Assembly (NCBI GenBank): GCA_001179505.1
Contig: CDMY01000366.1
Location: 372,001-436,000, forward strand
Direction of reading: 5' to 3'
DNA from: Vitrella brassicaformis CCMP3155
Taxonomy: Eukaryota; Protista; Chromerida
Length of the DNA stretch: 64,000 nt
Below are positions 7,768-55,876 of this stretch, piece by piece. Under the pieces are notes generated by a model. That model had not been told where the DNA came from. It saw nothing but the letters and a program-made list of their open reading frames with translations, and did no database searches. Within the stretch, counting starts at the first letter, position 1, and every line of letters begins with the position of its first letter. Position numbers and translations under genes: made by a program.

Positions 7768-8439
7768 CATGTCGTTGGTCCATTAGGACGCTCGCTGCTC
7801 TGAATATGACGTGTGCCTTTCGTGTGGATGGTGTGTCACATTAGTGGCATCGCATCATTACATGTGCTCTGTGGACTTTGTGAATGCGCGAGTAACTGAA
7901 GACATGTGCCTGTGTGTGGATGGGTGGGTGCAGTGCATGACCCTTCTCGATCGATTCGACGATTGCAATGTCTGCATGCGCCTTCACCCGCCAAGCACCA
8001 ACCGATCCACGCGCACAATTAATGTATGTCTGCCACGGCACGGATACATAACATAACACGCAACATGACAAATAAATGTCTGGATGGAGCAGCAACAGCC
8101 GCTGGGAAAAAACAAAAAGGGACAAGAGCGAAAAAAGGAAACGGGAAGAACTCGTCGGGATCACACGTACATGAAGGCGCCTATATGCTGGTGCTGCGGC
8201 TGCGGCGTTGCTGGCTCCCTCCCCCCCTCCCTGGCTCCCTCCCCTTTATATGTTGGTCAGCCCCTGTATCTGTACGCGGCTGACCGATCGGCCGACTCAC
8301 GGACGTCTCAGGAGAGAACAACAAAAGAAAGGAAATAGCTGGTCGGTCATAGTATCACGATATCATATCATAAGTGAGTCGCTCGTTGTCTTGATACCAA
8401 ATGAACCGCACGGGCAATGCAATGCCTATCCTGTACGTA

Positions 8440-8532
8440 TCACCAAGTATGTATGTATAGGTATGTGTTCATGTACACATGTACATACGTACATACTGTA
8501 TGTGTCTCTGCATATGTATGTATGTATGTACA
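8440..8532. repeat. Degenerate (TATG/TACA)n microsatellite between convergent 3' ends
   Basis: gtatgtatgtatag...catatgtatgtatgtatgtac seen directly. Confidence 0.7.
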
Positions 8533-8652
8533 CGCCGCCACCGAAAAACAATCAATCAATGAGAGCAACAACCAACCAACCAACCCACTGCGCTCACCGC
8601 ATCCACCCCATCCATCTGCCTGTACATATCCCTCTCCTCCGCCCCCGTATAT

Positions 8653-10250
8653 TCACTCCCTCCGGCACCCCTCTGCGTCCCGCCTGTCGGAGCACTCGCC
8701 TCGGGCACTGCTCGTCCGCAGCCCCGCCACACCACCACCACCACCACCAGCACCAGCACCAGCAGCAGCCTTCTGTGCATATCGTTTGGGGTCATACAAG
8801 ATGGAGTTGGCGTCAATGCGATAGCTGATGGCGGCGGGGATCGTCCAGTCCCTCGGCAGCGGCGTCAGGGCCTCCACCAGGAGGTTGAGGCACGCTGACC
8901 GGCGGAACGCGGCGACGAGTGCGCCGCCGTTGCGCCACGAGAGGCCCCATAGTGAGGACCAGTTCTCGAGTGAGCGAGCGTTGTCGAGGTAAAGGGCCGC
9001 CTGGCCGTCGGGGGAGCTGTGGGCCGCCACCCAATTCATCGCCATGTCCTCGCAATTCAACTCGCGGTTGAACATCTCCATCAGCCCGCTGCACACACAA
9101 CGGACACACACCATAGCAACCGGGGAATGAATCGCTTGTCGTTCCTCTTGGTGCGTGTGTACCGGGGCATGGTGTGCTCGTATTCGAGCAGCAGCCTCCT
9201 TGGCACGAGTGCAGCGGCGGTCAGGATGATGTTGCCGGGGTCGGCCTGATAGTGGAACTCCCCCGTCTCGGTGCAAACGGCGAACGACCGCGAGAGGTCT
9301 TCCGTGCCCACCAGCTTGCTGTCGCCCCCGTACAGGTGAGCCACAACCGCCATCTTGAAGATCGTCTCGCACTCGAACGACCGGTCGTCATCGAGATTCA
9401 GCACGTAATCGGTCGACGTCTCGTTGCCGATGAGGAACCGCTCGCCGAGGTCCCTCTTGCCGGCGATGAGACGCACGGTCTTGGGGAAGGGCACTGGCTC
9501 CTGTGGGGGGGTGGGGGTCTCCCAGAGGGAGCTGTCCTGGGGCAGCGGGCCGAAGGGGACGTCGGGCCACCAGTCGATGAGCACCTCCTTGACCAGGGGG
9601 CATGTGAGCAGGGGGATGAGGTTATGCGCCAGCCAGCTGTCGCGCCTCTTCTTGCCCATGTACACCACAACCGTCACCGTGTCGTTGAGCTTCCCGGGGT
9701 CGGCCACCATCCACATGTCGGCGGGAAGATCCATGTCGTCCCTCTCCGTCTCGGCCCGCGACACAAAGGCCGTGCTGGGACACCTGCACGGCTCCCACTG
9801 GTCGAGCTTCACGTCGGGCGGTGGTCCAGATGCGGGGATGGGCGGCCTGTCAGGGCTCTGGAGGAAGCCCTGGAAGCCCCGACAGGTGTGCACAATGGAC
9901 GGCGTCCAGTCGGACCACCTCAGGAAGGCCCAGAAGCTCACCAAGAAGATAGCAAAGAAGGCCAGCAGCGGCCCTCCCACCCTAATCACCGGGTGCCTCG
10001 CCAGCTTGCCAAGGCATCCACACCGACACCTCACGCACCGACACCGGCCGCATGCTAAAGACGGCGGGCACGCACAGCGGCACCGGCAAAGGCGCGACAG
10101 CCTGCACAGAGGCCGCGAATTCGGGGACGGCGAGTAGCAAAGGGACGGGAGGCTCCAGCAGGGACGGGAAGGGGTGGGGCTGGGGGGAGGACCGTCCGCA
10201 CGGGGGCTGGGCGACGACAGGCACGACAGCCGAGTTGACCGAAGGAACAT
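8653..10250 (-). CDS. Glycosyltransferase family 64 (EXTL2/exostosin C-terminal-like), type II membrane protein; 5' end uncertain
   Basis: TM helix PLLAFFAIFLVSFWAFL, then LGERF...VLNLDDD (DxD). A 74-bp intron (9162-9089) joins MPRGLMEMFNRELNCEDMAMNW (the GT64 NCED.AMN motif), followed by RRSACLN. Confidence 0.85.
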
Positions 10251-10690
10251 TGTGGGTCAAGGCCTTGCAGCCGTAGACAATATATGCCCCCTTCTCTGCT
10301 ACTTGTGCACCGACAGGGATGGGTGCACGGCTGTCATGGGCTGTCGTGGTCCGCCAGCAGTGAGCTCCACCGCCCCCCACATCCTCCGATGAGTCCTCGT
10401 GACTTGGTCTTGCCTCACAGTCGCAGGCGTCGAGAAGAAGAGAGCAACGGGCTCTAAGACCTCGACGGTTGGCCCCTATCCTCCTCTGTCCATCGCCTTT
10501 GCTTCCTCTTTTTCCTTCTTCCCCTCTCGCAGCAGCGGTTTCAGGGAGCACCCTAGGCGCCACTTTAAATTCATCTGGGCTAGGGTAGCGCTTCCCAGAG
10601 CTGTGTCCCAGAGCTGCGGGCGCATCATTTCCTCAACATCATAACCCTCCCCTCCCCTCGAATTGAATCATCCATCGCGTCACGTCCACG

Positions 10691-40151: not shown

Positions 40152-40262
40152 AAGTGGTTGGCCAGGATTTGCGAGCCTGAAGGTGACTTTTTTCATGAAA
40201 CCTGCAGCTGCGCATATACACATCGACGCGGATTGGCTTGAACTATTGCTGTTTCCTGAAGA

Positions 40263-41423
40263 ATGAAGCTTATTGTCCTACTGGTCATCCTTCCCTCGGC
40301 GTTGGTCGACGGCATCTCGCTGAACCGAGGCACACGAGGGCGCGGACGGACCGACGGCAACTACACGCCCTCGCCACTCTCATCTCCACTCTGTGCCCGT
40401 GATGACCAAGCCATCCATCGCACTCCCACGTGCAAGGCGGCCCTGCCTAGCGGATTCGAGCAGCTCAAGAGGAGTGTGCTCAGCCAGGCGTCATCTCTCT
40501 GCCAGTCGGGTGACGCTTCGTCCTGCAGCGATGAGGAGTGCAAGCTGACGCCCGGCATCATCGACTATCATCATCAGGGGGAGGATTGGTCGTGCGGACA
40601 GTGTGGCTGCCGAAATCGGCAGTCGCCCATCGACCTGCCCGTCACTGCTCCCGTGTCGGCAACCACCTTCAAGTACGGCTTCCTTCCCGCCGGGAGCATG
40701 TGCATGGCCAACACGGGCTTCACCATCGAGCTGCGGCGCCAAACCATCACCAGCGACGCCATCCCCAACTCCTTCGAGGGCGCGTGTCCAAGCGCGGCGC
40801 CGTCAGTGAGCGACACCGACCAGGCGGACATTGAGTATGATGGCGGAAGCTATGTCCTGGACAACATCCACTTTCATGCCCCAGCAGAACACACCTTCCA
40901 GGGCCAGCGGCACTCCCTCGAGATGCACGTCGTCACGAAATTCATCCCGGCGACAGAGGCGGATGCAAACAAGACGCACTTTCTGGTGTTGGGCTTTACC
41001 TTTGTGGAGGGGCAGTCGAGTGCATTCCTGGAAGAGATCCTGTCGCGTGGGGTGCCCGCCGTGTCCAACCGGGTGACCCTCATCCCTTCACAGCCGCGCT
41101 TTGACGTCAACGAGCTCATCCGTGAGGCTGCCGAGTTCATCTACTATCCGGGCAGCCTCACCGTCCCGCCGTGCTCCGAGAACGTCGAGTGGTTTGTGAA
41201 TCGCCGGCCGCTGGAGGCGTCCCCCGCCCAGCTGGCGGTGTTTCTGGCCGAGTTCACCAGCAACGAGTGCTGCGAGAACTCCAAGGGCAACTACCGTGTG
41301 ACGCAGAACCACAAGAACCAGCAGCTGCACCACATGGCCATCGTCAAGGGCGTCCCACTGGCCAAGAAGCGGCCCTTCAGCCTGGGCAAGAAGAAGAGCA
41401 GCATGCGGGCCGCGGTGGCGTAA
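40263..41423 (+). CDS. Secretory-pathway alpha-carbonic anhydrase; intronless
   Basis: Signal peptide MKLIVLLVILPSALVDG; RQSPIDL; Zn ligands NIHFH and LEMHVV; EHT; YPGSLTVPPCSENVEWFV. Confidence 0.95.
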   Translation: MKLIVLLVILPSALVDGISLNRGTRGRGRTDGNYTPSPLSSPLCARDDQAIHRTPTCKAALPSGFEQLKRSVLSQASSLCQSGDASSCSDEECKLTPGIIDYHHQGEDWSCGQCGCRNRQSPIDLPVTAPVSATTFKYGFLPAGSMCMANTGFTIELRRQTITSDAIPNSFEGACPSAAPSVSDTDQADIEYDGGSYVLDNIHFHAPAEHTFQGQRHSLEMHVVTKFIPATEADANKTHFLVLGFTFVEGQSSAFLEEILSRGVPAVSNRVTLIPSQPRFDVNELIREAAEFIYYPGSLTVPPCSENVEWFVNRRPLEASPAQLAVFLAEFTSNECCENSKGNYRVTQNHKNQQLHHMAIVKGVPLAKKRPFSLGKKKSSMRAAVA

Positions 41424-41912
41424 GTAGATACGAGCGGCCGGGGGTGACCTGACATGTCGATACGGTAGATGAGGTAGATGAGATGGAGGAACATTGCATC
41501 ATCCGATGGTGCAGTTTCTTCGGTCGGTAGATAGCTGGTTTGCTGGCTGCTGTTAGGATGGTTTTTCTCGTCTGTTTGTCATCCAGTAGGGATGTCAATT
41601 CACTGAGTGGTCGCTGTGCAGATGCCTACTTGAATGCGTGTACGCGTTTGGCTGTGCCTGCCTGCCTGCCTGCCTGTGTGTGTGTGTGTGTATGATTGGC
41701 TGGCTGCGTCACGATAGCTGCTGCTGCATATTTGTACAGACCGTCTGTGTTTGTCGTCCGTGGCCGTCACGCGACCATTTCGAGGACACGAACGTTCAAT
41801 GGTCCACGACCATCCATGAGCCAAATACACGCTGCATCATTATCTTATGCACCAAGACACACGCACACTGCTCATCTCATACGCACCCACCCACGCACAA
41901 CCGGTACACACG

Positions 41913-44900
41913 TCAGTAGTGTTTGGTGAGCAGGTTCTTCCTGAGCTCCCCCATCTTAGATCTCAGCTTGTGTCTCTTCTCCCGATCCTCCCTCTTGCTG
42001 GGCTGCCGCTTCCGCTTCTGCTCCAGCCGCTTCTTCAGCGCATCTGCACGAGCCTTGTGGAAACCCAATGGCCTTCAACCAACACACCACAGCACAGTAA
42101 CCACAGCAGACGGTGAATGCATGTCGTGTGCTCGCTTCGAGGGTGGATTGTGTTGTGTTCGCTCACTTTGGTGGTGTGTATCCGCTCCGCCTGGCGCGGT
42201 CGACGAGTTTCTTGGGGCGTGAGAGGTCCCTCTCGGCCTTGCGGATGCCAAAGCCGCCTGATGTGTACAATGACGGATGAGAGAGAAACAAGGGCGGCGT
42301 CTCCTTTGTGTCACCCACTGACTGACCAGCTTGGCTGAGTTGTTCGAGCCTCCCCCCCTTCTCGTAGTCCTTCCTAGAGGATGACAGGTCGGACAAGGGC
42401 CGCCCCAGACGGATCGCCCTGCACACAGCCAACGAACAAACGACACGAACCGCACACAATCGGTCCACGCCTTCACTTGCGGCACATACGGATGGGCGTA
42501 CCTCTGCACACCCGTGGCGAGCACTCGGTCTCGCCTCTGCAGCAGGCAGAGGACCGAGCCCTTGCTGCCAGCGCGGCCTGTGCGACCGGCCCGATGAATG
42601 AAGTCGATGGGGTTGAGTGGGAAGTCAAACATGACCACCTGGTCCACCTGCGCGATGTCCAGACCCCTACACACACACAACACCACAATGCGAGACGAGA
42701 CGGGACGGCACATCGCAAGCAAAGCACACGTGTGTGTTCCGTCTGCTCACTCACCTGGCGGCAAGGTCGGTGCACACGAGGTAGGGCACCTGGCCGTGTC
42801 GGAAGGCCTCGAGGTTGGCCTTTCGCTGCTCCTGCGGCACCTCACCGTGATATGCCTGGATGGATGGATGGATGGAACACACACACACACACACACATAT
42901 GGCCTCCCTGCTCTGCTGATGCGGTGCCTCCATTGTCTTTGTGTTCGCACCAGTGAGGTGAATCCCGCCTCCTGAATGGCATGCTGGCATGCCCTGCAGC
43001 TGTTGACGGTGTTGCAGAACACCAGCGTGCTCTTACGGTACACCTCACCAGCCCCTCTCTGACCATCACCTCCCTCTGCAGGCCGCTGCGGCCCCCTCAC
43101 CTTCAGCAGCTCTCGCAAGGCGTCAAGCTTGTCCTCTCCCTGTATCCACAACAGCCATACAGAGATTGGGATGGCATCATGGATGGTCTCTCAATGAGTG
43201 TGTCTTTTCCTCACCTTAGTGTCGATCATTTCGTATCGCACATTTGGGAGCGACTTGTGCAGCCCCGGCGCCTCGACGTAGCGCACGGCCGGGAGATCCT
43301 CTTGGTCCAGCAGCCGCCTGACGGCCTTGGTCAGGGTGGCAGTGGCAAACACCAGCTGGGGCTGCTCGGTGTCGGGTCTGGTGATGAGCGGCTGTAGGAG
43401 TTTGTTGATGTCGGGGCCGAAGCCCTGCATGAGCATCGTGTCGACCTCATCTATCACCACGTAAGACACCTGCAGACACAGATATGGAACTACGATCATG
43501 TGACGGTTCGTTCGAGGTCCCTGGTACCTCGCTGAGCGCTAGGTTGCTCTTGTCCCAGTGGAACAGGACGCGCCCGGGTGTGCCGACGACCACATCGAGG
43601 ATCTTGGACAGGTCGCGCTTCTGCTTAGCGAAACTATCGCCACCGATGACCGAACACGACGACAACTGGCACCCACAGCGCACACACATGGAGTGAAAAG
43701 AAAGGTGCCTTGTTGCGTTGTCACCTTGGCCAGCTGGCTGCTGCCTCTCAGGACCTCCAGTACTTGTTGGCTCAGCTCGCGTGTGGGGGAGAGAATCAGA
43801 GCACGGGGCCGCTTCGGCCGCCGCAATGACCGGCCGTCCAGCTCCTGAGCGAACACGCAAGTGACCCACCAATCGTCCTCATGTGCTAATTGTCTCCATC
43901 TCTCCCTGCGTACCTCTGATTTCAGGTGTTGCATCATGGGCAGCAGGTACGCGAGCGTTTTGCCGGATCCCGTCTCGGCCGCGAACACGATGTTGCCGCC
44001 CGACAGCACCTGTGGGATGGCCAGCCGCTGGATGGCCGTGGGCTCCACATCGCCCAGCATGCTAGCCGTGCCACGAGCTATCGACTCCTCCAGACCCAGC
44101 CGGCGCCACTTGAGCATGTGCTCACCCTCGACCTGGACCTGATGTGCGCTTGTTGGCTTGACAGCTGTGACGACGGGCTTGGTCTGCGGTGTGTCGGGCG
44201 GGTTGTCTTTCGGTGTGGGCTCGGACTCGTCTGGTTTCCCTTCCGACGTCCACTGTTCCCATTGGCCGTCAGAGCCGCTGGACGTCCACTGCTCAGCCTC
44301 TTCGTGCTGTTCTGCGGCTTCCTTCTCTCCTTTGATGTCTTCTTCCTCCTCGTCCATGAAGCCCTCCTCTAGGACCGTCATGAGCATGGTGCCCAGGTCG
44401 ACTGACGGCAGCTGAGAGAGCCGCAGCCTCATCCCATCGGCATCACCGCCCGTCTCGGATATGAGCTGCTGCAGCTCCGGTATGCCGAAATCATCAAGTT
44501 CACCATAACCATCCTCCTTAGCACCGGTCGATTCGAGGATGAGTTCGATGGCCTCTGATCTCGTCACGCCCATGCCGCTGAGGACCGAGTCATCATCGGC
44601 AGCTTTCTCATCCGCCGACGGTTCGCCAGACAGGCCTGTTTGCTGGTCATCCAGCCGGATGCCGACCTCAGGCACCTTCTGTGCGTCGTCTGGTGCATGC
44701 ACAGCGATGGGCGCGTCACTCGTAAGGCTGTGAGGGAGAGCAACAACGTCACTACCGGAAGGCTCGTCGTCCGAGTTGGTCGCCAGGGACGCCGCCGCCT
44801 CTTGCTCCTTGGTTTCATCTTCGGTTTGCGCGAAAAGCTGAGTGAATGTCGTCGTGACTTGCTCGTCCGTCATCTGTGGTAGGTCGGCCGCCAGCTGGTC

Positions 44901-46931
44901 CAGTGCTGCCGTGTCCCCGCCACGCTCTTCCTCTGACACCCGCGCCGCCTGCATGATTGCCTTCTCCATCTCACCCCGAGACACGTTGACCACACTCGCC
45001 CCTCCCGTCCAGCCGAAAGCAGCCAGCGAAGCGTCCGCAATCCGTCGCAGCGCAGTGACGTCGAGACTCCGCCACTCCTCCTCGGTCTGCGGGGCGTCAG
45101 TCGGCAGCATGTCGTTGTCCTTCAAGTCCCCCATGAGCTCAAGGAGGTCGTGACGAGACATCCCCGCCAGCACTTGAGGTGCAGCACGCTCCACCTCGAC
45201 AGTGTCTGACACCTCCAGCAGCGGCTCAAGGGGGCCACCGGCCTCGGCAATAGCGGCCGACCTCTCAGCTCGCTCCTGCGAGGCGCGATACATGTTGCCC
45301 CAGAGCGCCCGCACCTCCTCGTCAGTCATGAGGGGCACGTCGTCTCGTGTGACGCCTTCTTGCGTGAGGAGGAGGTCGGCGTTGCCTTCGTCCAGGACGA
45401 TGCTCTCCAGCACGTTGCGGTCAAGTCGTGAGGCCCTGGCGGGGTCAGCCGCATCCTCCAGCCGACACAGGGCCTTCGCGCAAAGCAACCTGCACACACA
45501 CAGCCACAGTTGTGTCCTTCCTGTTGCGTATAGTTGATCACCGACCTGATGCGCTCTGTTGAGATGGTGTCGTAGTGTTCCATCCCAGCCGCTTGCTCGG
45601 GCAGCGCCGCCGCCACGATGGGCAGAATGTCCAGCAGATCATCGCGGGACATGGCCTCAAGGTCGCTGAACTTTTCTCTCACCCCCTCACTCGCCTCCTC
45701 CTCCAACTCCGCCCTGAGAGCCGCCTCCCGCTCTGCACGCCGCCACTCTTTGGCGACGCGCCGCCTCTCCTTATCTTCCTCCTGCAGGCGGCGCTCCTCG
45801 GCAGCAAACTCTGAAAGGTCCCACCCGGTCGACCCCACGGTCGCCGCGAAGATGCGGAGCAGCTCCACGTCGGATGCCGCCGTGAGGTACTTCCGTGTCC
45901 TCCGCTTGGGCGGGGCGAACATCTTGTTCTTGCGGATGAGGTCAACCATCTCGTCGCGAGTCAGGCCGAGAGCAACGGTTGCTGAGCCGCCTCTGTCGGC
46001 TGGTGGTGTGTGGTCAGCCGTCGGCTGAGTATCAGGTAGATCGTTGACCACAGGAACTGTGCTGTCTGGGGTCGTTGAGGGCGACAGCTCGTGAAGAGTG
46101 TCTCTGAGACCTCGTTGCAGCCTCGGATCTGGGAACAAGGGGACCAGGCATCAAGATGCGTCGAGGCTTCCTGTCTGTGTCGGTCTCCCCACCTGGTAGC
46201 ACAGCGATCATTGCCGTGAACAGATCCACAGCATCGACGTGCTCGCGCCACTGCTCACTCCTCCTTGCATCCCCGAAGAGCCCCAGCACCTTCGACAGGT
46301 ACTCCCTGCTGCCCATCCGGCCGTCACGCCAGTCCACCGACAGCGACTTGAAGTCGCCAAACGCCACATCGCCCACATAGGCCTTGAGGCGCTTGGCAAA
46401 CACCCTGTTTTGGGTCACACGCTGATCTGCGTTAAAGGTGCGAGTCGCCTTGAGCACACCATCAATCTGCACACAACGAAGGCCGGCAAAGACAACCACA
46501 GTGGGAGCAGCAACACGTGTCAGTGAGCCAGCATGTGCGTGGCTGACCTCTGCCTGTGCACCCCTCAGCAGTTGCAGCTCCTCGATGTCCCACAGGTGCT
46601 GATCGGCAGGAGGTGACAAATCCGTCTCAGCAGCAGGTGGTGATTCCAGTGATGGCTCCATGATGTTTGGCGCTGCCGAAGCAGGCTGCAGCACCAAACC
46701 TGCCACGGTGCACACACATCAGCAGCACATTGGAGGAGTCAAATGAGCTGCCTGTGCAAGAAAGCATCCATCTGTGATTCGTTCACCTGACGAGCGGCGT
46801 GGGAGTCGCTGTCTGCGGGGAGGTATGTGTGGCACCACTGCATTCGGCAGATGGATGAAGCCAGCACCACACACCGCTGATGGGATGCCGGACGCCGCCG
46901 CACCACCGACCAAAGCGTTGATCAACTTCAT
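41913..46931 (-). CDS. DEAD-box RNA helicase (DEVD variant), plant RH39/RH50-like, with bipartite plastid-type leader and about 850-aa N-terminal extension
   Basis: Q motif [63 protein letters not shown]. Exon 1 (46931-46787, [28 protein letters not shown]...[10 protein letters not shown]) splices in frame to the downstream exons. Stop at 41915-41913. Confidence 0.9.
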
Positions 46932-47149
46932 CTTCTATTGAGTAGCTGGCTGGCCACATGTCCACTGATCCGCGAGAATGGCTTCATTCAGCAAGGTCTG
47001 TTTCTCAATTGGGAAGCTCGCCTTGCAGCTGCGAGCTCGCGTCTTGTGAGCTGGAACGCAAAGAGTGGGAAGGCTCCCTTGACCTGCATCTGACCTCTGC
47101 ATGCCGAGATCTTCGGAGTTTCTCCAACAGTTGCCGGCGCGATGAATGA

Positions 47150-48607
47150 ATGAGCTTTGGTGTGCTTTCGATGAGGCAGATCCTGTTCTCCGTCGCTGTA
47201 TCCCTGCTCTATGGTGCTGCTGAGGCGCATTCACTCATCGCTTCCATGCGGCGGCGATGTCAGCCATCCCCATTTCAATCAACAGCCGACGCCGCCTTTA
47301 TCCCCCCTTCCATCTACCATCCACAATCTCTGTCCCTCTCACCGGCTCGGCCAGCCACCAGGGCGTCCTCTGCTGCCAGCAAGCAGACGGCAGAAAGGGC
47401 CACCCGGAGGAAAGGCAAGGCCAAGAAGGTCAAGCAGCCGCTGCCGCCGAGGAGCCTGCGGGTGCGGACGCGGGTGAGCCAGTCGGGTGAGGAGCTCAAG
47501 AAGTACGAGACGTCGATAGAGAAGAAGGTGGAGCTGCAGAAGGGGCCTGACTGGGTGCACCCGTCGCTGCGGTGGCTCAGCCGGGCGACACTCGACCGGC
47601 TGTGGCGGCGCGTGTCCAACAAGGAGGTCCTGCTGACGACGGGCAAGTGGGGCGTGGAGGCGACGCACGTCAACTCGCTGCGTGACCTGGTGAGGAGCCA
47701 CGGCATTGTCAAGGTCAAGGACAATGACGTCAAGCAGCTCAACAGCACCAGGACGGCCATCCAGCTGCAGAAGTGGGACGAGGGCGTCCCCATCGACAGC
47801 GGGGCGGAGATCGTGCAGGTTAATTTGAGCGCCATGACAGCTACGGTCTTCCCGACAGTTGCTCACTGCCGTGTGTCATCCATCCTGTGCAGGTGAAGGG
47901 CAAGTTCATACAATTTGCCCTACCTGAGAATCTCACCGACCTTGCGGGCGACAGCGATCTCATATCGGCCGTGGCGCAAGGAGGCGCCTTCGCCGACCTC
48001 ATCGAGGACCTCACAAATGAGGGCGTCTTCCAGACACTCATCGACCGGCTGGAAGACGACGGCCGCTTCCAGCGTGAGATCGACGAGTGGGAGGAAAGGA
48101 TGGCCCGGGAGGAGAGTGACAAGGCGAGGGGCGTCAAGCGGCCCAAGGGCGTCAAGCCGGCGGGTGAGAGGCCCGACGCAGAGCTGCTTGCGGGCAAGGT
48201 GGGCGTGGAGGGGTGGTATGACGACCTCGTCAAGGACCTCAACAGAAGGCGGGTATTCGAAGAACTCGCTGACGAGCTCACAGGTAGAGTAGATGGATGG
48301 ATAGATCACTGGACCCACCGGCAGACCGATAGATACATGTCATGGGCGAGGGCATGCATTCTTCTCTGTGTGTTTGTGTGTGTGTGTCTGGTCGGCGAGA
48401 CAGCGAATGGGGTGTTGTCTCGTTGGGCGGACGACCAGGTCGCCACCAGGGGCATCGAAGCGACGGTGGCGAGCAACCTCGCCCTCAGGTAAATATCTGC
48501 ATGGCTGGCTGTATTCGTTCAGCCATCGATCTGATGCATGTCCTATCTGTGTCTGCAGGAGGAAGGAGAGCGAGAGCGACAACGATGATGAGGATTATGA
48601 TTACTAA
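47150..48607 (+). CDS. CRM (CRS1/YhbY) domain RNA-binding protein with signal peptide plus transit-like leader; 4 exons
   Basis: LLTTGKWGVEATHVNSLRDLVRSHGIVKVK...IVQVKGKFIQF matches the CRM pattern (IGKxG...H.lIKVK...vq..G..). Leader MRQILFSVAVSLLYGAAEA followed by an Arg/Ser/Ala-rich region; acidic C-terminus ends at TAA 48605-48607. Confidence 0.8.
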
Positions 48608-49599
48608 GCTACTAGTGTGATAGCTACCTCCTGTGACCTCAGAAATCAGCCATTCGTTGATCCAGGGGGCGAGCGGGGCGGGGGCGTGATTAAGACGGTG
48701 ACACGGGGGTCGATTTATCGGTTGCGTGTGTGCGTACGCAGTTGTGCGTAAGTGCGAGGGTATAATTTGTGTAAGAGGGCAGGGAGGGGGGCGCTATCTG
48801 TCCATCGACTGATTGGTTGATTGATTGATTGAACTGCAGCCATGAATGCATGTCCTGCAGGCAGTACCATGATCCGACTCAAGCCAACACTCAGACTAGG
48901 GCAAGAACATGCAACACGCCACGCATCAGCCGAATTATGTGGCCGCCAAGCACGCCGCGGACACAGCGCGGCGGCGAAAACGCGAAAAAGACGGCCCGAA
49001 AGAAAGGAACCGCTGAGACTCAGCAACGCTCGCTGTCTTGTCTATTCTTCCCATCCATGAGTGTGATCAGATCACACTCAGACCACCCTCATGGATGGTA
49101 AGTACGTCTGCATCTTCTGTATGCCTCTCTACCAGTCATCCCTCATGCTGCTTTAAAAATCCCCACCCCCTCTCTCTACGGCACCGATCTGCTCGTCTCA
49201 TGCACACCGGTTCTGTGCTACGACATCGTGTGTATGTGTGTGTGGATTCGTGTGTGTGTCTCTGTGTGTGTGTGTGTGTGCGGTTGGTGCAGTGTCGTGC
49301 CTACCACCGTCCTCCTCCTGTTGATGACAAGAAGCCACCAGGTGTCGTAGTGGACGAGATGCGGACACAAGGCAGGCACACATGGAACCACATGCATGCA
49401 CTGGCAGGCGCCACAGCTCCAAGCCCCTCGCTCACCTACACCCACACACACACGACTGGCACTGACATGAATGCAGGCAGGATCTTTCCTTGTGGGTGTG
49501 TGTGTCCGTTGTGCCGTCGGTTGACCTGACCTGTGTGTGTGGAGGTGACGGCCTCGGCACCGACCACTGGACACTCCCGCAATGGACGGACGAATGCGG

Positions 49600-52500
49600 T
49601 CACTTGATGGTAGGGGGCTTGAAGCGACGACGCGACCGGTACTGCATTCATTCAGACCAAGCAGCAGCAAGAGATACTAATCTGCCCCTTTCCCACCCAC
49701 TGCAGGGGCGCCTCTTTTACTATTACAAGTTCTTGCAGGTTGAAGGTGGCTTGTGGAACCACGACCTCCTGAGGAGCCTCCAGAGGACGACAAATCGCCT
49801 GACGGTTGGCGTCAGCCACATGAGATGAACGCCCACCACCACCACCAGCAGCAGCAGCGGCCGCGCCTCCACCTTCCACTGTGCGCCTGGGGGCGATCAC
49901 GCGGCCATCATCGTCTGCTGGTTGACCACCCTCCACCCCCTCCCCCTCTCTCTCCCCTTCCCCGCCGTCTCTGCCCATCTTCCTCGTCTTGGCCCCTCCT
50001 GCTGCTGCCGCTGCCTGGCCACCTTTCTCGGGCGACCTTGGCCGCTTCAGTCCCGCCCTGTCGCTCTCAACAGGCAACTGCTCGTCGGGGATGAGATTGA
50101 TCGGCTGCACGGCCGTCCCATACTGATCAGACAGCTGCTGCCGCTGCCGGTCACCCTGCTGCACCTCCTGCTCCTCTTGGTGGATTGGCTCGTATTGCTG
50201 CTGCTGCTGCTGCAGCATGGGCTCGTCTGCGGCTGTGAGAGGGAGGGGAGCGGGGCGTGGTGCGTCAGGCATGGGGATGGCGGCGTCGGAGGGCTCAGAG
50301 AGCTCATCCTCGGGCGGTGGTGGTGGATGTGGCGGGGGAGCTGCCGCTGCGGCTGCCGCTGCTGGTGCTGATTCGGATGGTCGTGGGACGTCCTCCAGTT
50401 GTGGTAGGGGTGAGGGCGGCGGCTCTTGCTTCACCGCCTCACCCTTGACCTTCTTCTTGACAGATGTCGCACCCTGCACACATCGATGGATGGATAGATA
50501 GATGCAGCCGAAAACAATCAATCTTCCTCCCTCCCGCCGTGCCTCCTTGCGTGCCTCACCACGAGCATTGTGGCCTTGCTGAAGGCATCGACAAGTTTGT
50601 TGAGGTGCTGCATGCCCTGCACCATCTTGGCCCGCGTCTCCTCCAGTGCAGCGTCAGTCATGTCGGCAGACAGCTCCTCGGCTGCCTCACCGATGCGGCT
50701 CGCGCCCGTGTTGTCTTCCTCCTCGTGTGTGAGGTCGACCACTCGCGACACGATGGCCTCCGGCACGCCTGCCGCCCTCATCAGCTGGTAGGGGTCGCTG
50801 AACATGCTCCCGCTGACGGGCAGGGGGTTGCCGTCCTCACCAAGCTCCCGCTTCGGTTCCCGGCCGGTCTCCTCGTCTGCCGCCTCCACATCCTTGTCAC
50901 GCCCTCCACCACCAGCAGCAGCGGCGGCAGCAGCAGCCGGGACCTCCTCAGCAGGCTTTTCCTGTCGAGGTCGGTCACTGGCAGCATCCGCAACAGCAGC
51001 AGGGAGAGGCGAGGGAGTTTCGACCCTGTCTGCAGGCGACTGAGCCTGATCGGGAACGACAGCTGGGGGTGCGAGCAGCAGGGGGGGCGGTCGCTTGCTG
51101 GCTGCTTTTGGAGGGGGCCTGGGCTCCTGATCAGATGCTGCTGCTGCCGCTGCTGCTTGTGGGGGCGGTGCTGTGCTCTTGGGCGGTGGGGGCGGTGGAG
51201 GAGGGGGCGTGGCGGCCAGCGGGGGACTGGCGAACTGCACACACACACCCATGCACGCAGATCAGTACATGCATCAAACCACCCACTGCGTCAGTGACTC
51301 ACCCCTTTGTTTGGTTTGCCCTTGTCCTTCTGTGCCTTCTTGATGGCGTCGAGCCTCGCCTTCAGATCGCTGATCTTCTGCGGGTCACGCTGGGACTCCG
51401 GCTGCGCCCGCAGCTCCAGAATCTGGGCCTGCACGGCAGCCTTCTCCTGCTCCAACGACATCTCGGGCTCAGGTGACTTGGGCGGCTCGGCAGCCCCACC
51501 TGCTGCGGCCTCGCCTGTGATGTCGACAACAGGGGCAGGCGGCATCTCACTCGGCTCTTCTTGACGCATGACAGTGTCGGCCACGGGTGGCGGGGCAGCT
51601 GCCGCACCTGTTCCTGCTGCGGCAGAGTCATCCATGTTTGGCGCGTCGACCATCACCGCATCTCCGTCCCCCCGTTCTCTGCTGGCCTCCAGCCCCCCGG
51701 CAGGGGGCTGTCCCTCATCCCCCGCCCTCTCGGTCTCTGCCGCTGGCCTGTCAGCTGCTCCCGGCTCGGGGGAGAAGCGCCTGTTCTGGGCGTTCTGCCT
51801 CAGGATGCTCTTGAGCTGATTCAGTCGCTCCGCCTGATTCATCCGCTCCGCCGCTGTCGCATCGGCCGGTGGCGCCTGGGGGGGCTCCTTGGGGAGCGGT
51901 CTCACAGCCCCTGTGCGGCCCCTCGCCAGGCGAATCGATGAGAGCGGCTTCCCCTGCCCCTTGTCGTTCACGCTGAGGGCATTCGTCGCAATGTCTTGGA
52001 ACTGATCGCTCAGTGCCAAGCCGGAAACCTCAGGCCGCGTATCCTGTTCGCCCACCGCGGCCCTCCAAGGCTCTCGGTCACGGCCGTCCGGGCCAGGCAG
52101 GTCAGAGCACAGCTCGATCAAATCGCCGACGGCGTTGACAATCTCGGTCAGCCGATCGCCGCTCACATTGCCGTCAAACACGTCCTCAGCATGCTCCTGC
52201 CCTTCTTGCTCCCGCGGCGGTGCCACTGGAGCAGCGGGGGGCACAGGTGGCCGTACCGAGCGCGGAGGTGGGCGCGGAGGGGGTGGCGGTGGAGGGCGAA
52301 TCGGCATATCAGCGGCTTTGGGGGCGGGAGGACGGGAAGGAGGCGCCAATGGTGCGGCTGGCGGCCGTCCGTCGTGGAAGGATGGAACAGGGGGGATGCG
52401 AGGGGCAGCAGGCGGAGCCTTTGGGGCCTTCGGAGCCATAGCCTTCGTAGGCGGTGCCGACGCAGCTCTTTCGCCGCCGCCCCCATCCTCTGGCTCCTTT

Positions 52501-55500
52501 TCCTTGTCTCCTGGCGGCGGCAGCAGTGGTGAGTGCCCTCCACTCTTCAGGCCCAGCTTCTGCAGCTGCTTGTCGCGAGCCACCAGCCGCTCCCGTCGCT
52601 GCTCGCTGACCATCCACTGTCTCTTCCACTTTGTGAGCCCAGCCTCGAACTCGGCCGCGTCGTCCGTCTCTGTCTTGATCTGGCTGGGCTTGACGGTCAG
52701 GTGGATGCGGACGTCTGGACGGCGGCGGGGCATGCCGTCATCCGGCTCCTGCTTGATGACCACACGACGAGGCTCGTCTGCCGCCGCCACAGTCCCCGCC
52801 GGTCGGCTGCCGACAGCAGGGGGCCTGGAGGGTGGTGGATGGGGGACGGCCGCACCAGCGGCTGCCGCAGGGCGCTCTTGGTCGTCTGTGATGGGTGACG
52901 GCTCACGGCGCTGAAGGGGCTCGGGAGAGATGTGATGTCTGTCACGGTTGTCCTCTCTGTAGTCACGCCCTCGGGCCCTCCTGCCTCTCTCCTCCCTCAC
53001 ATCCCTGATCCAAGCAAAAGAGCACAGTCAGTGTGCGCGACACACACAAGTGTTCGTCCAGGTCGTCGTGCCTGTGTCATGCATGCCCTTGCTTACGTCA
53101 TCCAGCCCTTGTCCTTGTCCGCGTCGCCCTCCCCGCGTCCCCGCGCGGCGAGAAATGCCATCCGTCGGTACTTCTGCCTCTCTCTGTCCTTGACCGTCTT
53201 GCCCTTGTACCGACGCTGCTTCGGCGGCCGATAATTGGCTCGCCGCCGTCGAGGTCGGTCGGACTCGTGTCGGTAGGCGCTGCTCTGCCGCCTCTTGCTC
53301 CGCGGACTGACATGGCGCTTGGCTCCCCGCTCAAAGGACCGCTCGCGTGACACCGACCGCTCCCGGGATGACGGTGTGACCTCACTCCATTCCCCATCCG
53401 AAGAGAGGGAGACCGACGAGAGGGATCGGTGTCGGCGTGACGGGTGCCTGCGGCGGCGGGACGGGCCGGCAAGTCGCTCGCGTGACCGTGACCGTGATCG
53501 GTCCCGTTTGTCCTTGAGGCGAGGCCGACTCCTGCGGACGTGGTCGCTCGATATGGGCGATATGGGGCTGAGGCTCGACGTCTCACTCACAGACAGCGAG
53601 CGGGGGACACGCTTCTTGCCCCTTGTGACGTCACGACGAGACAGCCCTCTCCCTCTGCCGTGCCTGTCGCCAGAGGGTTCCATACTCCTGTCGGGCCCGC
53701 TGGACGACCCCCGCCTCTCCCTCCTCCTTGGAGGCGCCGCGTCTTCCTCAGAGTCATCCTCGATCTCTATCACCTCATGCCGCTGCTGCTGGGGCGCCGC
53801 TGGACGGGAGGGAGGGGGCCGTTTTGATGGTGGTGCCGCTGGTGTCGGTGGGTTGCTGGCGGCCTTGGCTGCCGCCTGTTTGGCCTGGGCGATGACCGCC
53901 TTGGCTTCGGCCTTTGCCTTGGGGGCCGGGGGAAGGTTGATGCGGACGGCATCGCGGGCGGCGCCTGGAACTTGTGCAGCAGCGTTGATACTCTGATGCG
54001 AAAAGGACGACAGCAAGGGAAATGAGTAAACACCTCATGTCGATCCCTCCGGCTCACCGCTTGTCGTGGCGTCAGCACAGCCTTGTGTACAGGGCCGGTC
54101 GCACCCACAGCACCATCGCCCGACGCAGCCACACCAGCAGTGGGGAGCATGGGCGGCAGTGACGGCGCGCGAGCCCCTACGGGGGGCTGTGGTGGCTGCG
54201 ACGGTTGGCCGAAGGCACTGCCGTAGAAGGTGAGATCGTGGTGTGGCGGCACCTGATCGTCCCTGTGCGGGTGTGCTGCTTTGGGGATGGGTGGCTGGTG
54301 CTGCGCCTCGCCCCAGAAGCCTCGATTGTCGCTGGGGGCAGCACTGGGTGGATCGAGGCCTGGGGCTTGACCAAGGGACTGAATAGACTGAATGAATGAA
54401 CACCAAAAGAACAAGAACGAGACAGGTAGAGGCACGCGTCCGACACGAATGGCTCTCCCTCCCTCCCTCCCTCCCTCGTGTGTGTCTTGTTGTCTTGTGT
54501 GCATGACTTGACTGACCTCTGGCTGCATGGGGAATGGGGGCCAGACGGGGGGATAGGGAGCGTACATACCCTGGGGCGGATACGGGACCCACGGCGGCAT
54601 AAACGCCTGCTGCTGCTGCTGCATGTACTGCTGCTGCTGCTGATGCTCAGCAGCTGCTATGGCCTCTTGCTGAGCATACTCCACATAGATGGGCGCCACA
54701 TTGGCAGGGGGTGCAGGTCCAGCAGCAGGTGCTGCCATGTCGCCTTGCCATGGCTCCATCCCCTCCCAGCCCATCAAGCCCGGCTCGGCAGGGGGCCCGC
54801 GGTGCCGTCCGGGGTGGTCCTCCTGGTACTGCTCTGTGTCGACGATCTCCTCGTACGTGGGCAGAGTGCGGTGGTGGCCACCGTTGGCTGCAGGTGTGTG
54901 TGGGCGGGGGTGTGCGTGCTTGGGTCGGTGGCTGAGGCCTGTTGCCTTGGCCTTGGGCCGCGAACCGGTCGTGACGAATCCAGGGGCCTTGGCCTTGGTG
55001 GGGTTGGAGCTCACATGGGCCACCGCTCTGGCAGACAGACAGGCAAGCAGAGACAAACGAAACATGCGCATCCGTGCATCGATCCGATCCTATCTGTCGG
55101 CGGTGCCCGTCGTGTCTTTGTTCTCCTTCTCACCCTGATGCCTTGGCCTGCCCTTGTCCGCCGTTGGAGCCATTCGGGCTCGCCTGACCCGCCACATGTC
55201 CGAACCCGTCCTCAATCCGCTTCCCCTCTCCCTTCTTCTCGCGATCGCTCCGACCTTTGACCTCCGCCCACTTCTGCGCCACCACAGACTTCAACGCGTT
55301 TGTGAGCTCGGCGAAATGCGACGCCTCCACATCATCACCACAACCATTCAGCTGCTGTTGTTGCTGCTGTCCTGGAGCTGCGGCAGCAGGCGCCGCTGAT
55401 GAGGCGGCGCCATTCGGCGGGAGAGCGGCCGAGCCGGGCACGCCAGACATAGACGCTTTGCGCTGGCTGCCGATCAAGCGCAGTGCCACTGCGGTAAGGG

Positions 55501-55876
55501 TCTCGGGGCGCGGCTGCGGACCCTGCTGGTCAATGCCGTTGACGAGCGGCGGGCCACTCTGCGTCCTCTTGACTGCTTTGTGGCTCTCGCACATGGCCAG
55601 AAAGGCGTCACCCGGTTCAGATTCCTCCGCATTGATCGGTGGCGTGGCCGCTGGCTCGGGCGGGGGAGCTGGGGGAGCTGCAGCAGCAGCACGAGCACCA
55701 GCGGCGGCGGCCGGGGTGACGTGTTGCTTGGTGCCTCGCTTGGCGACGGCTGTCCCTTTCGGCTTGGCTTTCGCCTGAGCGGGTTTGGCGTTGGCAGACG
55801 AGCGTTCGACCAGCTCTCCCTCCTCGATCTCGCCCTCCTCTGGCCCAGTCGCCCCGACATGCGACGCAGCTGCCAT
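49600..55876 (-). CDS. Large (about 1,900 aa) intrinsically disordered Pro/Ala- and RS-rich nuclear-type protein; 8 coding exons, probable 5' UTR intron
   Basis: Consecutive in-frame splices link the ORFs at 55130, 53770, 53093, 51291, 50518 and 49652. Contains PEEGEIEEGEL, RDRSRSRSRE and QQ/Pro tracts. Last exon and stop (49600) are tentative. Confidence 0.7.

What the first reader, a model, noticed from the sequence alone, without database searches (positions are those of the whole stretch)
41913..48607. Head-to-head pair of two apparently plastid-targeted RNA/ribosome-maturation factors (RH39-like DEAD-box helicase and CRM protein)
Seen: the ATGs at 46931 (-) and 47150 (+) are 218 bp apart, and both proteins begin with a hydrophobic signal followed by an Arg/Ser/Ala-rich, acid-poor stretch. 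Established: such bipartite leaders target complex plastids; plant RH39 processes plastid 23S rRNA; CRM/YhbY domains act in large-subunit maturation and organellar RNA splicing. Inference: one bidirectional promoter co-expresses two partners of a plastid rRNA/RNA-processing module in a red-lineage secondary plastid.
Basis: partly seen in the sequence, partly recalled or inferred. Interest (0 to 1): 0.78.

Follow-up and report, generated by a model that had tools for sequence, protein, structure and literature searches.

The report
Plastid-type RH39 helicase beside CRM-like gene
In the alga Vitrella brassicaformis, a very long RH39-family RNA helicase and a small protein with a divergent CRM/YhbY-like domain are transcribed back to back; both probably go to the plastid, but this spacing is routine in this genome and the pairing is absent at five relatives' loci, so nothing shows they work together.

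Summary
The window is Vitrella brassicaformis CCMP3155 nuclear DNA. ATGs at 46931 (-) and 47150 (+) lie 218 bp apart. Both genes are spliced and present in transcript assemblies, whose 5' ends lie about 46 nt apart.

The minus gene (14 exons, 1346 aa) is an intact DEAD-box helicase. In a careful ML tree it sits in a 100/99 clade with stramenopile-alga and apicomplexan sequences, inside the clade that holds plant RH39. Diatom orthologues carry SAF/AAF-type plastid signal-cleavage motifs. Toxoplasma, Besnoitia, Eimeria and Babesia orthologues start with strong signal peptides.

The helicase also has about 800 extra N-terminal residues. These include a ZNF598-PAH-like module that is shared with gregarine-like relatives.

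The plus gene (390 aa) has a signal-like start, an 86-residue basic, Ser/Ala/Pro-rich stretch and one domain resembling CRM/YhbY. That match is below Pfam's threshold, and structure prediction failed.

The "co-regulated module" reading is not supported. All three divergent gene pairs in the 21-kb locus have 224-304 bp spacing. The helicase has other neighbours in Toxoplasma, Babesia, Nannochloropsis, Tribonema and a diatom. Targeting predictors, Chromera synteny and co-expression remain untested.

The scan had already noted this same stretch (s1-218539) and the PAH-like domain (s1-218619).

The parts
41913..46931 (-). RH39-family DEAD-box helicase gene, 14 exons, 1346 aa. Exons: 46931-46787, 46699-46548, 46466-46193, 46128-45546, 45489-43914, 43844-43725, 43665-43528, 43469-43215, 43139-42951, 42855-42755, 42666-42502, 42418-42327, 42257-42167, 42072-41913.
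   Evidence: Transcript-contig joints support eight introns directly, and a loose end at 42754 marks a ninth; the intron at 42856-42950 lies in a skipped repeat. All those introns are GT..AG. The last three introns lie outside the laid stretch and were inferred from GT..AG sites and the annotated length of 1346 aa.
46787..46931 (-). Exon 1: putative bipartite leader. It has a hydrophobic start of 24 residues, Phe at position 25, then a Pro/Arg-rich stretch free of acidic residues.
   Evidence: Composition; comparison with orthologue N-termini. No predictor was run.
46193..46466 (-). Exon 3: ZNF598-PAH-like domain (protein residues about 100-190).
   Evidence: Pfam PF23202 at 27.4 bits against a threshold of 25. 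The same domain scores 31.6 bits in orthologue P0005. An HMM of the module also finds Selenidium at E 9e-10.
44133..45808 (-). Acidic N-terminal extension (residues about 298-837; 123 Asp/Glu against 50 Lys/Arg) with a recurring motif [LMV]-[ST]-R-x-[DE]-[ML]..L.
   Evidence: No relative of this part was found among 1.84 billion representatives.
42327..44132 (-). DEAD-box core, interrupted by introns. Motifs Q, I (AETGSGKT), Ia (PTRELS), Ib (TPGR), II (DEVD), III (TAT), IV (FCNT), V (TDLAARGLD) and VI (HRAGRTGR) are all intact.
   Evidence: Pfam DEAD and Helicase_C; motif alignment; 42-52% identity to algal and plant RH39.
41913..42257 (-). Exons 13-14: Lys/Arg-rich C-terminal tail (28 Lys/Arg in the last 76 residues).
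46932..47149 (.). Shared 218-bp upstream region. Assembled transcripts end at about 47004 (minus gene) and 47051 or 47089 (plus gene). Overlapping palindromes GCAGCTGC (47025-47032) and GCGAGCTCGC (47031-47040) lie between these ends.
   Evidence: Contig ends are not mapped transcription start sites.
47150..48607 (+). CRM-like protein gene, 4 exons: 47150 or 47171 to 47818, 47893-48283, 48404-48488, 48559-48607. It encodes 390 aa from the annotated ATG and 397 aa from 47150.
   Evidence: The translation equals database protein P0001 exactly. Two introns have joints in transcript contigs; the 48284-48403 intron overlaps a skipped repeat, and its limits come from the match to P0001.
47150..47485 (+). 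Putative bipartite leader: a signal-like hydrophobic start, then 86 residues that are basic, Ser/Ala/Pro-rich and nearly free of acidic residues.
   Evidence: No predictor was run.
47588..47910 (+). Single divergent CRM/YhbY-like domain (P0001 residues 140-222), split by intron 1. The GxxG motif (GKWG) is at 47642-47653.
   Evidence: Pfam PF01985 E 5.5e-4, 20.7 bits, below the threshold of 27. Atlas first hit is a CRS1_YhbY cluster. Colinear alignment to E. coli YhbY, z 3.25.
47911..48607 (+). Acidic C-terminal half with no recognised domain. A low-confidence model suggests it is helical.

Best explanation
These are two ordinary, expressed nuclear genes of Vitrella brassicaformis, transcribed divergently from one short nucleosome-scale region. 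The minus-strand gene encodes the chromerid orthologue of the plastid-type RH39 DEAD-box helicase. It is catalytically intact and most likely enters the ER through a weak signal peptide, then reaches the plastid through a short acid-free transit region with Phe at the predicted cleavage site. There it would remodel plastid large-subunit rRNA during ribosome assembly. It carries a myzozoan-specific N-terminal addition: a ZNF598-PAH-like module plus a long acidic linker, whose role is unknown and may be a docking or regulatory arm. It also has a basic C-terminal tail that probably binds RNA. The plus-strand gene encodes a small protein with a similar two-part leader and a single divergent CRM/YhbY-like RNA-binding domain. 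By analogy with bacterial YhbY and Arabidopsis CFM4, it most likely acts in plastid rRNA processing or ribosome maturation. What is shown: the gene structures, transcript presence, helicase family placement and motif integrity. What is inferred: plastid import, the rRNA substrates and the CRM fold. The adjacency is best read as the default head-to-head packing of this genome, not as evidence of a dedicated two-gene module.
For: Organism and annotation. Splicing and a single mRNA. Helicase core 42-46% identical to plant RH39 and 47-52% to stramenopile algal orthologues, against about 30% to DDX54. Careful ML tree: family stem 100/99; ochrophyte plus myzozoan clade 100/99, within an 83/84 clade of plastid-bearing lineages that includes plant RH39; fungal members are sister. 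Named members of the plastid-side clade are all photosynthetic organisms or apicoplast-bearing lineages and their gregarine-like relatives. Orthologue N-termini: diatoms show SAF, AAF and TAF motifs at the end of a hydrophobic start, while Toxoplasma, Besnoitia, Eimeria, B. bovis and GHVS have strong signal peptides. DEVD at motif II is shared with a red alga and a brown alga, and the diatom and Nannochloropsis have DEFD/DEMD, while green-lineage and fungal members keep DEAD. CRM: with GKWG at P0001 158-161. Established functions: RH39 in chloroplast 23S rRNA maturation (PMC5442247); YhbY on pre-50S particles and single-CRM CFM4 in chloroplast rRNA processing (PMC4021458). Chromerid plastid leaders are a signal peptide plus a transit peptide, with Phe at +1 less conserved in Vitrella (PMC6668581). 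Default layout.
Against: No targeting predictor was available, and no localisation data exist for either protein or for any orthologue I could trace. The helicase signal-like region is weakly hydrophobic. The CRM-like leader has His rather than Phe after the likely cleavage site. Both mRNAs may carry upstream out-of-frame ATGs, so the true N-termini are not certain. The CRM match is below Pfam's curated threshold, and both AlphaFold runs failed (pLDDT 39 and 33). P0001 has no detectable relatives by word search or in JGI metagenomes. The tree lacked named RH50, DDX28 and Mrh4 sequences, so the nearest outgroups are inferred rather than labelled.
Confidence: 0.6

Rival explanations
1. A true co-regulated module. 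The shared promoter exists because the helicase and the CRM-like protein act together on plastid large-subunit rRNA and must be made in step.
For: Assembled 5' ends lie only about 46 nt apart, with two overlapping palindromes between them. Both transcripts are present in the same three RNA-like runs. The functional classes match: DEAD-box helicases and YhbY both act on pre-50S particles (PMC4021458, PMC4042851).
Against: Three of three divergent pairs in the locus have the same spacing, and their partners are unrelated (carbonic anhydrase with an unknown protein; TMEM33 with an unknown protein). The pairing is absent in Toxoplasma, Babesia, Nannochloropsis, Tribonema and Stephanocyclus. Contig depth cannot measure co-expression. 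With thousands of head-to-head pairs in a genome of this kind, about one chance pairing within a functional class of this size is expected (my rough estimate, not computed).
Confidence: 0.2
2. The helicase is mitochondrial or dual-targeted, like fungal members of the same family, and has nothing specific to do with the plastid.
For: The family clade includes two fungal proteins with mitochondrial-type presequences. By my own knowledge, mitochondrial large-subunit assembly helicases (DDX28, Mrh4) are the animal and fungal counterparts; this was not tested here.
Against: Vitrella groups at 100/99 with ochrophyte and apicomplexan sequences that begin with signal peptides, not with the fungi. Its first 37 residues hold one Lys and no Arg, which is unlike a mitochondrial presequence.
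Confidence: 0.1
3. The plus-strand protein is not a CRM protein. It would be a lineage-specific secreted or ER-route protein whose weak match to YhbY is chance.
For: The Pfam score is below threshold. BLASTP to E. coli YhbY gives only E 0.035 over 24 residues. There are no relatives and no usable model.
Against: The Pfam match covers positions 4-80 of 84 at E 5.5e-4. An independent language-model search puts a CRS1_YhbY cluster first, with 192 shared features. The colinear alignment keeps the GxxG, H-x-[IV]-K-V-K and V-Q-V-x-G-K blocks, and 21 of 2000 shuffles reach its score.
Confidence: 0.15

Closest known systems
Arabidopsis RH39 (nara12), chloroplast DEAD-box helicase needed for 23S rRNA hidden-break maturation
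   Same: Same helicase family by tree. 42-46% identity over the whole core. Shared family signatures: TAT at motif III and FCNT at motif IV. A basic C-terminal tail is present in the Vitrella protein.
   Different: The Vitrella protein is twice as long. It has a bipartite-type leader rather than a simple transit peptide, about 800 extra N-terminal residues with a ZNF598-PAH-like module and an acidic linker, and DEVD instead of DEAD at motif II. It is not known whether Vitrella 23S rRNA has a hidden break.
Apicomplexan long DEAD/DEAH-box proteins (Toxoplasma gondii 1841 aa, XP_002365218.2; Babesia, Theileria, Eimeria; gregarine-like transcripts GHVS01042506 and Selenidium pygospionis)
   Same: Same subclade (83/98; 98 SH-aLRT). 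Long N-terminal extensions preceded by signal peptides. The PAH-like module is shared with GHVS and Selenidium, and marginally with Babesia and Theileria.
   Different: The parasite cores are much more divergent. Pfam does not detect the PAH-like domain in Toxoplasma, Babesia or Theileria. Their genomic neighbours differ. I found no published localisation for them.
E. coli YhbY and Arabidopsis CFM4 (single-CRM proteins)
   Same: One CRM-like domain with the GxxG motif, little else recognisable, and an N-terminal organelle-type leader as in CFM4 (PMC4021458).
   Different: The sequence is far more divergent (below Pfam's threshold). It adds a 150-residue acidic C-terminal half. No relatives were detected.
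Bidirectional promoters of head-to-head gene pairs in compact eukaryotic genomes
   Same: Divergent transcripts whose assembled ends lie within about 50 nt, and ATGs 218 bp apart.
   Different: Nothing marks this pair out from its neighbours, which have 224 and 304 bp.

Membership tests
DEAD-box RNA helicase (SF2) | Two RecA-like domains with motifs Q, I, Ia, Ib, II, III, IV, V and VI | tested here: met
   Pfam DEAD and Helicase_C on the exon translations. All motifs align and are intact; motif II reads DEVD.
RH39 subfamily (plastid type) | Phylogenetic placement with plant RH39, to the exclusion of other DEAD-box families | tested here: met
   Family stem 100/99. Vitrella lies inside the 83/84 clade of plastid-bearing lineages that includes plant RH39, and DDX54, DeaD, DDX4, DBP2 and DDX46/RH42 fall outside.
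RH39 subfamily (plastid type) | Plastid localisation | not testable with these tools
   Only indirect evidence: a leader-like N-terminus and classical bipartite leaders in diatom and apicomplexan orthologues.
RH39 subfamily (plastid type) | Required for plastid 23S rRNA maturation | not testable with these tools
   Function is known only for Arabidopsis and tomato (PMC5442247, PMC7384196).
CRM / YhbY domain (PF01985) | Score at or above Pfam's gathering threshold | tested here: not met
   18.6 bits for the whole protein and 20.7 bits for the domain alone, against a threshold of 27. E 5.5e-4, covering profile positions 4-80 of 84.
CRM / YhbY domain (PF01985) | Conserved GxxG loop followed by the H-x-hydrophobic-K-V-K helix/strand | tested here: met
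   GKWG at P0001 158-161, followed by SHGIVKVK. It aligns colinearly with E. coli YhbY GSNG...HHELIKVK.
CRM / YhbY domain (PF01985) | YhbY alpha/beta fold | tested here: inconclusive
   Two single-sequence AlphaFold2 runs gave pLDDT 39 and 33. No homologues were available to build an alignment.
Bipartite plastid-targeting leader of complex red plastids | ER signal peptide followed directly by a transit-peptide-like, acid-poor, hydroxylated or basic stretch | tested here: inconclusive
   Composition fits for both proteins. SignalP, ASAFind and HECTAR could not be run. The helicase hydrophobic core is weak.
Bipartite plastid-targeting leader of complex red plastids | Aromatic residue (Phe) at +1 of the signal cleavage site | tested here: inconclusive
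   The helicase has ...CGAG|F at residue 25 if it is cleaved there. The CRM-like protein has ...AEA|H. Phe is only weakly conserved in Vitrella (PMC6668581).
Co-regulated bidirectional gene pair | Divergent transcription start sites within a shared short region | tested here: met
   Assembled transcript ends at about 47004 (-) and 47051 (+). These are contig ends, not mapped start sites.
Co-regulated bidirectional gene pair | Correlated expression, or conserved adjacency | tested here: not met
   Adjacency is absent in five orthologous loci. Expression correlation could not be measured. Chromera was not available.

The most novel reading that the evidence does not exclude
Myzozoans (chromerids, gregarine-like lineages and apicomplexans) rebuilt the plastid RH39 helicase by fusing on a ZNF598-type PAH-like module and a long acidic arm. 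In Vitrella this helicase would be co-transcribed from a palindrome-centred bidirectional promoter with an orphan YhbY-like partner. Together they would form a plastid or apicoplast large-subunit assembly or ribosome-surveillance unit with no counterpart in plants.
Probability: 0.12. Interest if true: 0.6.

Novelty: new variant of a known kind. Interest (0 to 1): 0.35.

Why it matters
Factors for plastid ribosome biogenesis are almost unknown outside land plants, and nothing is known about them in chromerids. This locus gives a well-supported chromerid orthologue of RH39. It also shows that the whole apicomplexan-related lineage carries an enlarged version with a conserved N-terminal module. 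That nominates uncharacterised helicases in Toxoplasma, Babesia, Theileria and Eimeria as candidate apicoplast ribosome-assembly factors, which can be tested by tagging and knock-down.

Tried and rejected
- **Structure of the CRM-like protein.** AlphaFold2 was run on the whole protein and on residues 112-238, both as single sequences. Both were unusable (pLDDT 39 and 33), so no fold search was run.
- **Solved structures.** A PDB sequence search with P0001 gave no hit even at E 10.
- **Relatives of P0001.** The word search found only the protein itself. The JGI metagenome scan matched 200 patterns, none confirmed.
- **Whole-library search.** It was run with the 652-aa exon-5 ORF to retrieve the annotated full-length helicase and any relatives of the extension. 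It returned neither the protein itself nor any relative of the extension, only DEAD-box N-domains.
- **A CRM-like gene upstream of the Toxoplasma orthologue.** A tblastn hit at E 0.019 dissolved on inspection: E rose to 0.84 with composition statistics, and no ORF supports it.
- **TgmRHel.** This published Toxoplasma mitochondrial helicase is a different, DDX5-like gene, TGGT1_313240, so it says nothing about this family.
- **Literature on localisation.** Searches for an apicoplast localisation of the orthologue found nothing usable.
- **Non-coding features.** Rfam and Tandem Repeats Finder reported nothing in 41000-49500.
- **Self-similarity of the acidic extension.** A self-BLAST found no long repeats; only a short motif recurs.
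Full report
**Identity of the locus.** The plus-strand ORF at 47150 retrieves a 100%-identical 390-aa "unnamed protein product" of Vitrella brassicaformis CCMP3155 (P0001). Its public contig is CDMY01000366.1 of GCA_001179505.1. There the minus-strand neighbour is annotated as a 1346-aa protein with PAH_ZNF598 (weak), DEAD and Helicase_C hits. Window coordinate equals locus L001 coordinate plus 37170, so the annotated genes span exactly 41913-46931 (-) and 47171-48607 (+).

**Observation.** I laid assembled contigs of four public runs on 42701-48700, which is 6000 letters. Three runs behave like transcript assemblies. They skip every intron that lies in the laid stretch and outside the two skipped microsatellites, with CT..AC or GT..AG ends.

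One 4362-nt contig joins the 5' exons from about 47004 to the DEAD-box core and the 3' UTR. This shows a single mRNA for the whole 1346-aa protein. From these joints I rebuilt the first 11 exons (no stop codon, all introns GT..AG). The last three introns lie outside the laid stretch. I fixed them from GT..AG sites and the annotated protein length.

The four-exon model of the plus gene translates exactly to P0001. Transcript contigs of the plus gene begin at 47051 and 47089, so the assembled 5' ends of the two genes are about 46 nt apart. Contig ends are not mapped start sites.

If those ends are real, both leaders contain out-of-frame upstream ATGs. That leaves some doubt about the true N-termini.

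**N-terminal leaders.**
- Helicase: residues 1-24 are small or hydrophobic with one Lys and no acidic residue. Residue 25 is Phe. Residues 25-62 have five Arg and no Asp/Glu. The next 768 residues are strongly acidic (159 Asp/Glu against 80 Lys/Arg).
- CRM-like protein: about 26 hydrophobic residues ending in AEA, then 86 residues with 18 Lys/Arg, 2 Asp/Glu and 48% Ser/Thr/Ala/Pro.

This is the shape described for chromerid plastid presequences, a signal peptide directly followed by a transit peptide, with Phe at +1 less conserved in Vitrella than in Chromera (PMC6668581). I could not run SignalP, ASAFind or HECTAR. The helicase hydrophobic core is weak: its best 12-residue Kyte-Doolittle mean is 1.54, against 2.6 in the Toxoplasma orthologue.

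**The helicase.** Every DEAD-box motif is intact, and motif II reads DEVD. A word search with the Q-to-Ia region returned algal proteins and many plant proteins named RH39 as the best hits. No other plant RH paralogue name appeared among the 120 rows listed. The spliced core is 47-52% identical to stramenopile algal proteins and 42-46% to plant RH39, but about 30% to DDX54.

A search seeded with the best hit, P0005 (1882 aa, from a gregarine-like transcriptome), brought in long orthologues from Toxoplasma, Hammondia, Besnoitia, Neospora, Cystoisospora, Eimeria, Babesia and Theileria. It also supplied named outgroups.

In the careful ML tree (47 rows, LG+C20+F+G4):
- The family has a 100/99 stem of length 1.3.
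- Two fungal members are sister to an 83/84 clade of plastid-bearing lineages: a red alga, green algae, streptophytes with RH39, and a 100/99 clade of ochrophytes plus myzozoans that holds Vitrella.
- The myzozoan subgroup (Vitrella, GHVS, Selenidium, coccidians, piroplasms) has 83/98 support here and 98 SH-aLRT in the larger quick tree.

The fungal proteins have mitochondrial-type presequences. The diatom orthologues show textbook SAF, AAF and TAF motifs after a hydrophobic start. Toxoplasma, Besnoitia, Eimeria, B. bovis and GHVS begin with strong signal peptides. DEVD is shared with the red alga and the brown alga, and the diatom and Nannochloropsis read DEFD/DEMD, whereas green-lineage and fungal members keep DEAD.

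**The N-terminal extension.** Exon 3 alone scores 27.4 bits on Pfam PAH_ZNF598, against a threshold of 25. The same domain scores 31.6 bits in P0005. Residues 99-298 align with P0005 221-431 at E 3e-10.

An HMM built from these two sequences finds Selenidium at E 9e-10, and Babesia and Theileria marginally. Ochrophyte and plant orthologues are too short to hold this module. It is therefore an addition that arose in the myzozoan lineage.

The acidic part, residues 300-835, has no relative among 1.84 billion representatives. It contains five copies of a short motif, against 0.12 expected in shuffles, but the pattern was chosen after looking at the sequence.

**The CRM-like protein.** Pfam CRS1_YhbY matches residues 140-222 over profile positions 4-80 of 84. 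The E-value is 5.5e-4 at 20.7 bits, below the threshold of 27. The language-model Atlas search puts a diatom cluster annotated CRS1_YhbY first, with score 0.87 and 192 shared features.

A local alignment with E. coli YhbY, fetched from NC_000913.3, is colinear over about 70 residues. It keeps the GxxG loop (GKWG), the H-x-[IV]-K-V-K block and the V-Q-V-x-G-K strand. Its z-score is 3.25, and 21 of 2000 shuffles reach the score. BLASTP alone gives only E 0.035. Both AlphaFold runs failed and no relatives could be found, so the fold is unconfirmed.

I put about 0.85 on a genuine, highly divergent single-CRM protein. Its closest functional models are YhbY, which binds pre-50S particles, and chloroplast CFM4, which acts in rRNA processing and has RNA chaperone activity (PMC4021458).

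**Is the pairing meaningful?** In the 21-kb annotated locus the genes alternate strands. All three divergent pairs have 224, 240 and 304 bp between start codons, and the other partners are unrelated: an unknown protein with a carbonic anhydrase, and an unknown 1881-aa protein with TMEM33.

The helicase orthologues have other neighbours:
- Toxoplasma: 8 kb with no called gene upstream, then a short-chain dehydrogenase.
- Babesia bovis: POP1.
- Nannochloropsis: an acyltransferase.
- Tribonema: a trigger factor.
- The diatom Stephanocyclus: a protein with no Pfam hit that reads like a LYAR-type zinc finger (my reading of its translation).

A tblastn search of those loci with P0001 found nothing credible. 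Both genes appear in the same three RNA-like runs, but contig depth cannot measure co-expression. The shared region does hold two overlapping palindromes between the transcript ends. This is a lead about promoters in general, not about this pair. The "module" reading therefore rests only on functional plausibility.

**Verdict.** The identification of the helicase is well supported, and that of the CRM-like protein moderately so. Plastid targeting is likely but unproven. Functional coupling through the shared promoter is unsupported. The new element is the enlarged, PAH-like-bearing architecture of the plastid-type RH39 helicase across chromerids and apicomplexan relatives.

Noticed in passing
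window 47025-47040; also 40204-40211 and 55866-55873: The palindrome GCAGCTGC lies in or within 10 bp of all three divergent promoter regions of the locus. It occurs 13 times in the window against 3.6 expected. In the helicase/CRM gap it overlaps a 10-bp palindrome, GCGAGCTCGC, that is unique in the window and sits between the two transcript ends. It may be a core element of bidirectional promoters in Vitrella, or a by-product of Ala/Gln-Leu codons.
   Followed up: partly
L006:809-5541 and 6001-10623 (Tribonema minus): The Tribonema RH39 orthologue lies head to head, 460 bp apart, with a trigger-factor gene (Trigger_N/Trigger_C). Trigger factor is another plastid ribosome-associated protein. 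A 2025 paper on a truncated chloroplast trigger factor in ribosome biogenesis mentions RH39 16 times (PMC11731035, listed; not read).
   Followed up: no
window 44133-45808 (-), protein residues 246, 350, 495, 554, 693: A short motif, [LMV]-[ST]-R-x-[DE]-[ML]-x-x-x-L, recurs five times in the acidic extension and twice in orthologue P0005. Shuffles give 0.12 and 0.10. The pattern was chosen after looking at the sequence.
   Followed up: partly
window 46987, 46959 (-) and 47101, 47142, 47146 (+): Out-of-frame upstream ATGs lie in both assembled 5' leaders. One gives an 81-codon ORF that overlaps the helicase start. Either the true start sites lie downstream of them, or translation is controlled by upstream ORFs.
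   Followed up: partly
window 43845-43913 (-): Helicase intron 5 (69 nt) is in frame and free of stop codons. If retained, it would insert 23 residues between motifs I and Ia. The transcript contigs have it spliced out.
   Followed up: no
window 42849-42906 and 48359-48396: Short (CA)n/(GT)n-rich stretches lie inside introns of both genes. Read laying skipped them as repeats, but they fall below Tandem Repeats Finder's score.
   Followed up: no
window 40263-41423 (+): The neighbouring single-exon gene encodes a 386-aa alpha-type carbonic anhydrase with a strong signal-peptide-like start. It lies head to head, 224 bp apart, with a 275-aa protein that has no Pfam hit.
   Followed up: no
window 49600-55876 (-): The gene convergent with the CRM-like gene encodes an 1881-aa protein with no Pfam hit on record.
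   Followed up: no
helicase motif II, window about 43440-43451 (-): DEVD replaces DEAD in Vitrella, GHVS, Selenidium, the red alga Pyropia and the brown alga Cladosiphon; Nannochloropsis reads DEMD and the diatom Attheya DEFD. Green-lineage, fungal, Toxoplasma and Babesia members keep DEAD. This may be a red-lineage signature of the plastid-type helicase.
   Followed up: partly
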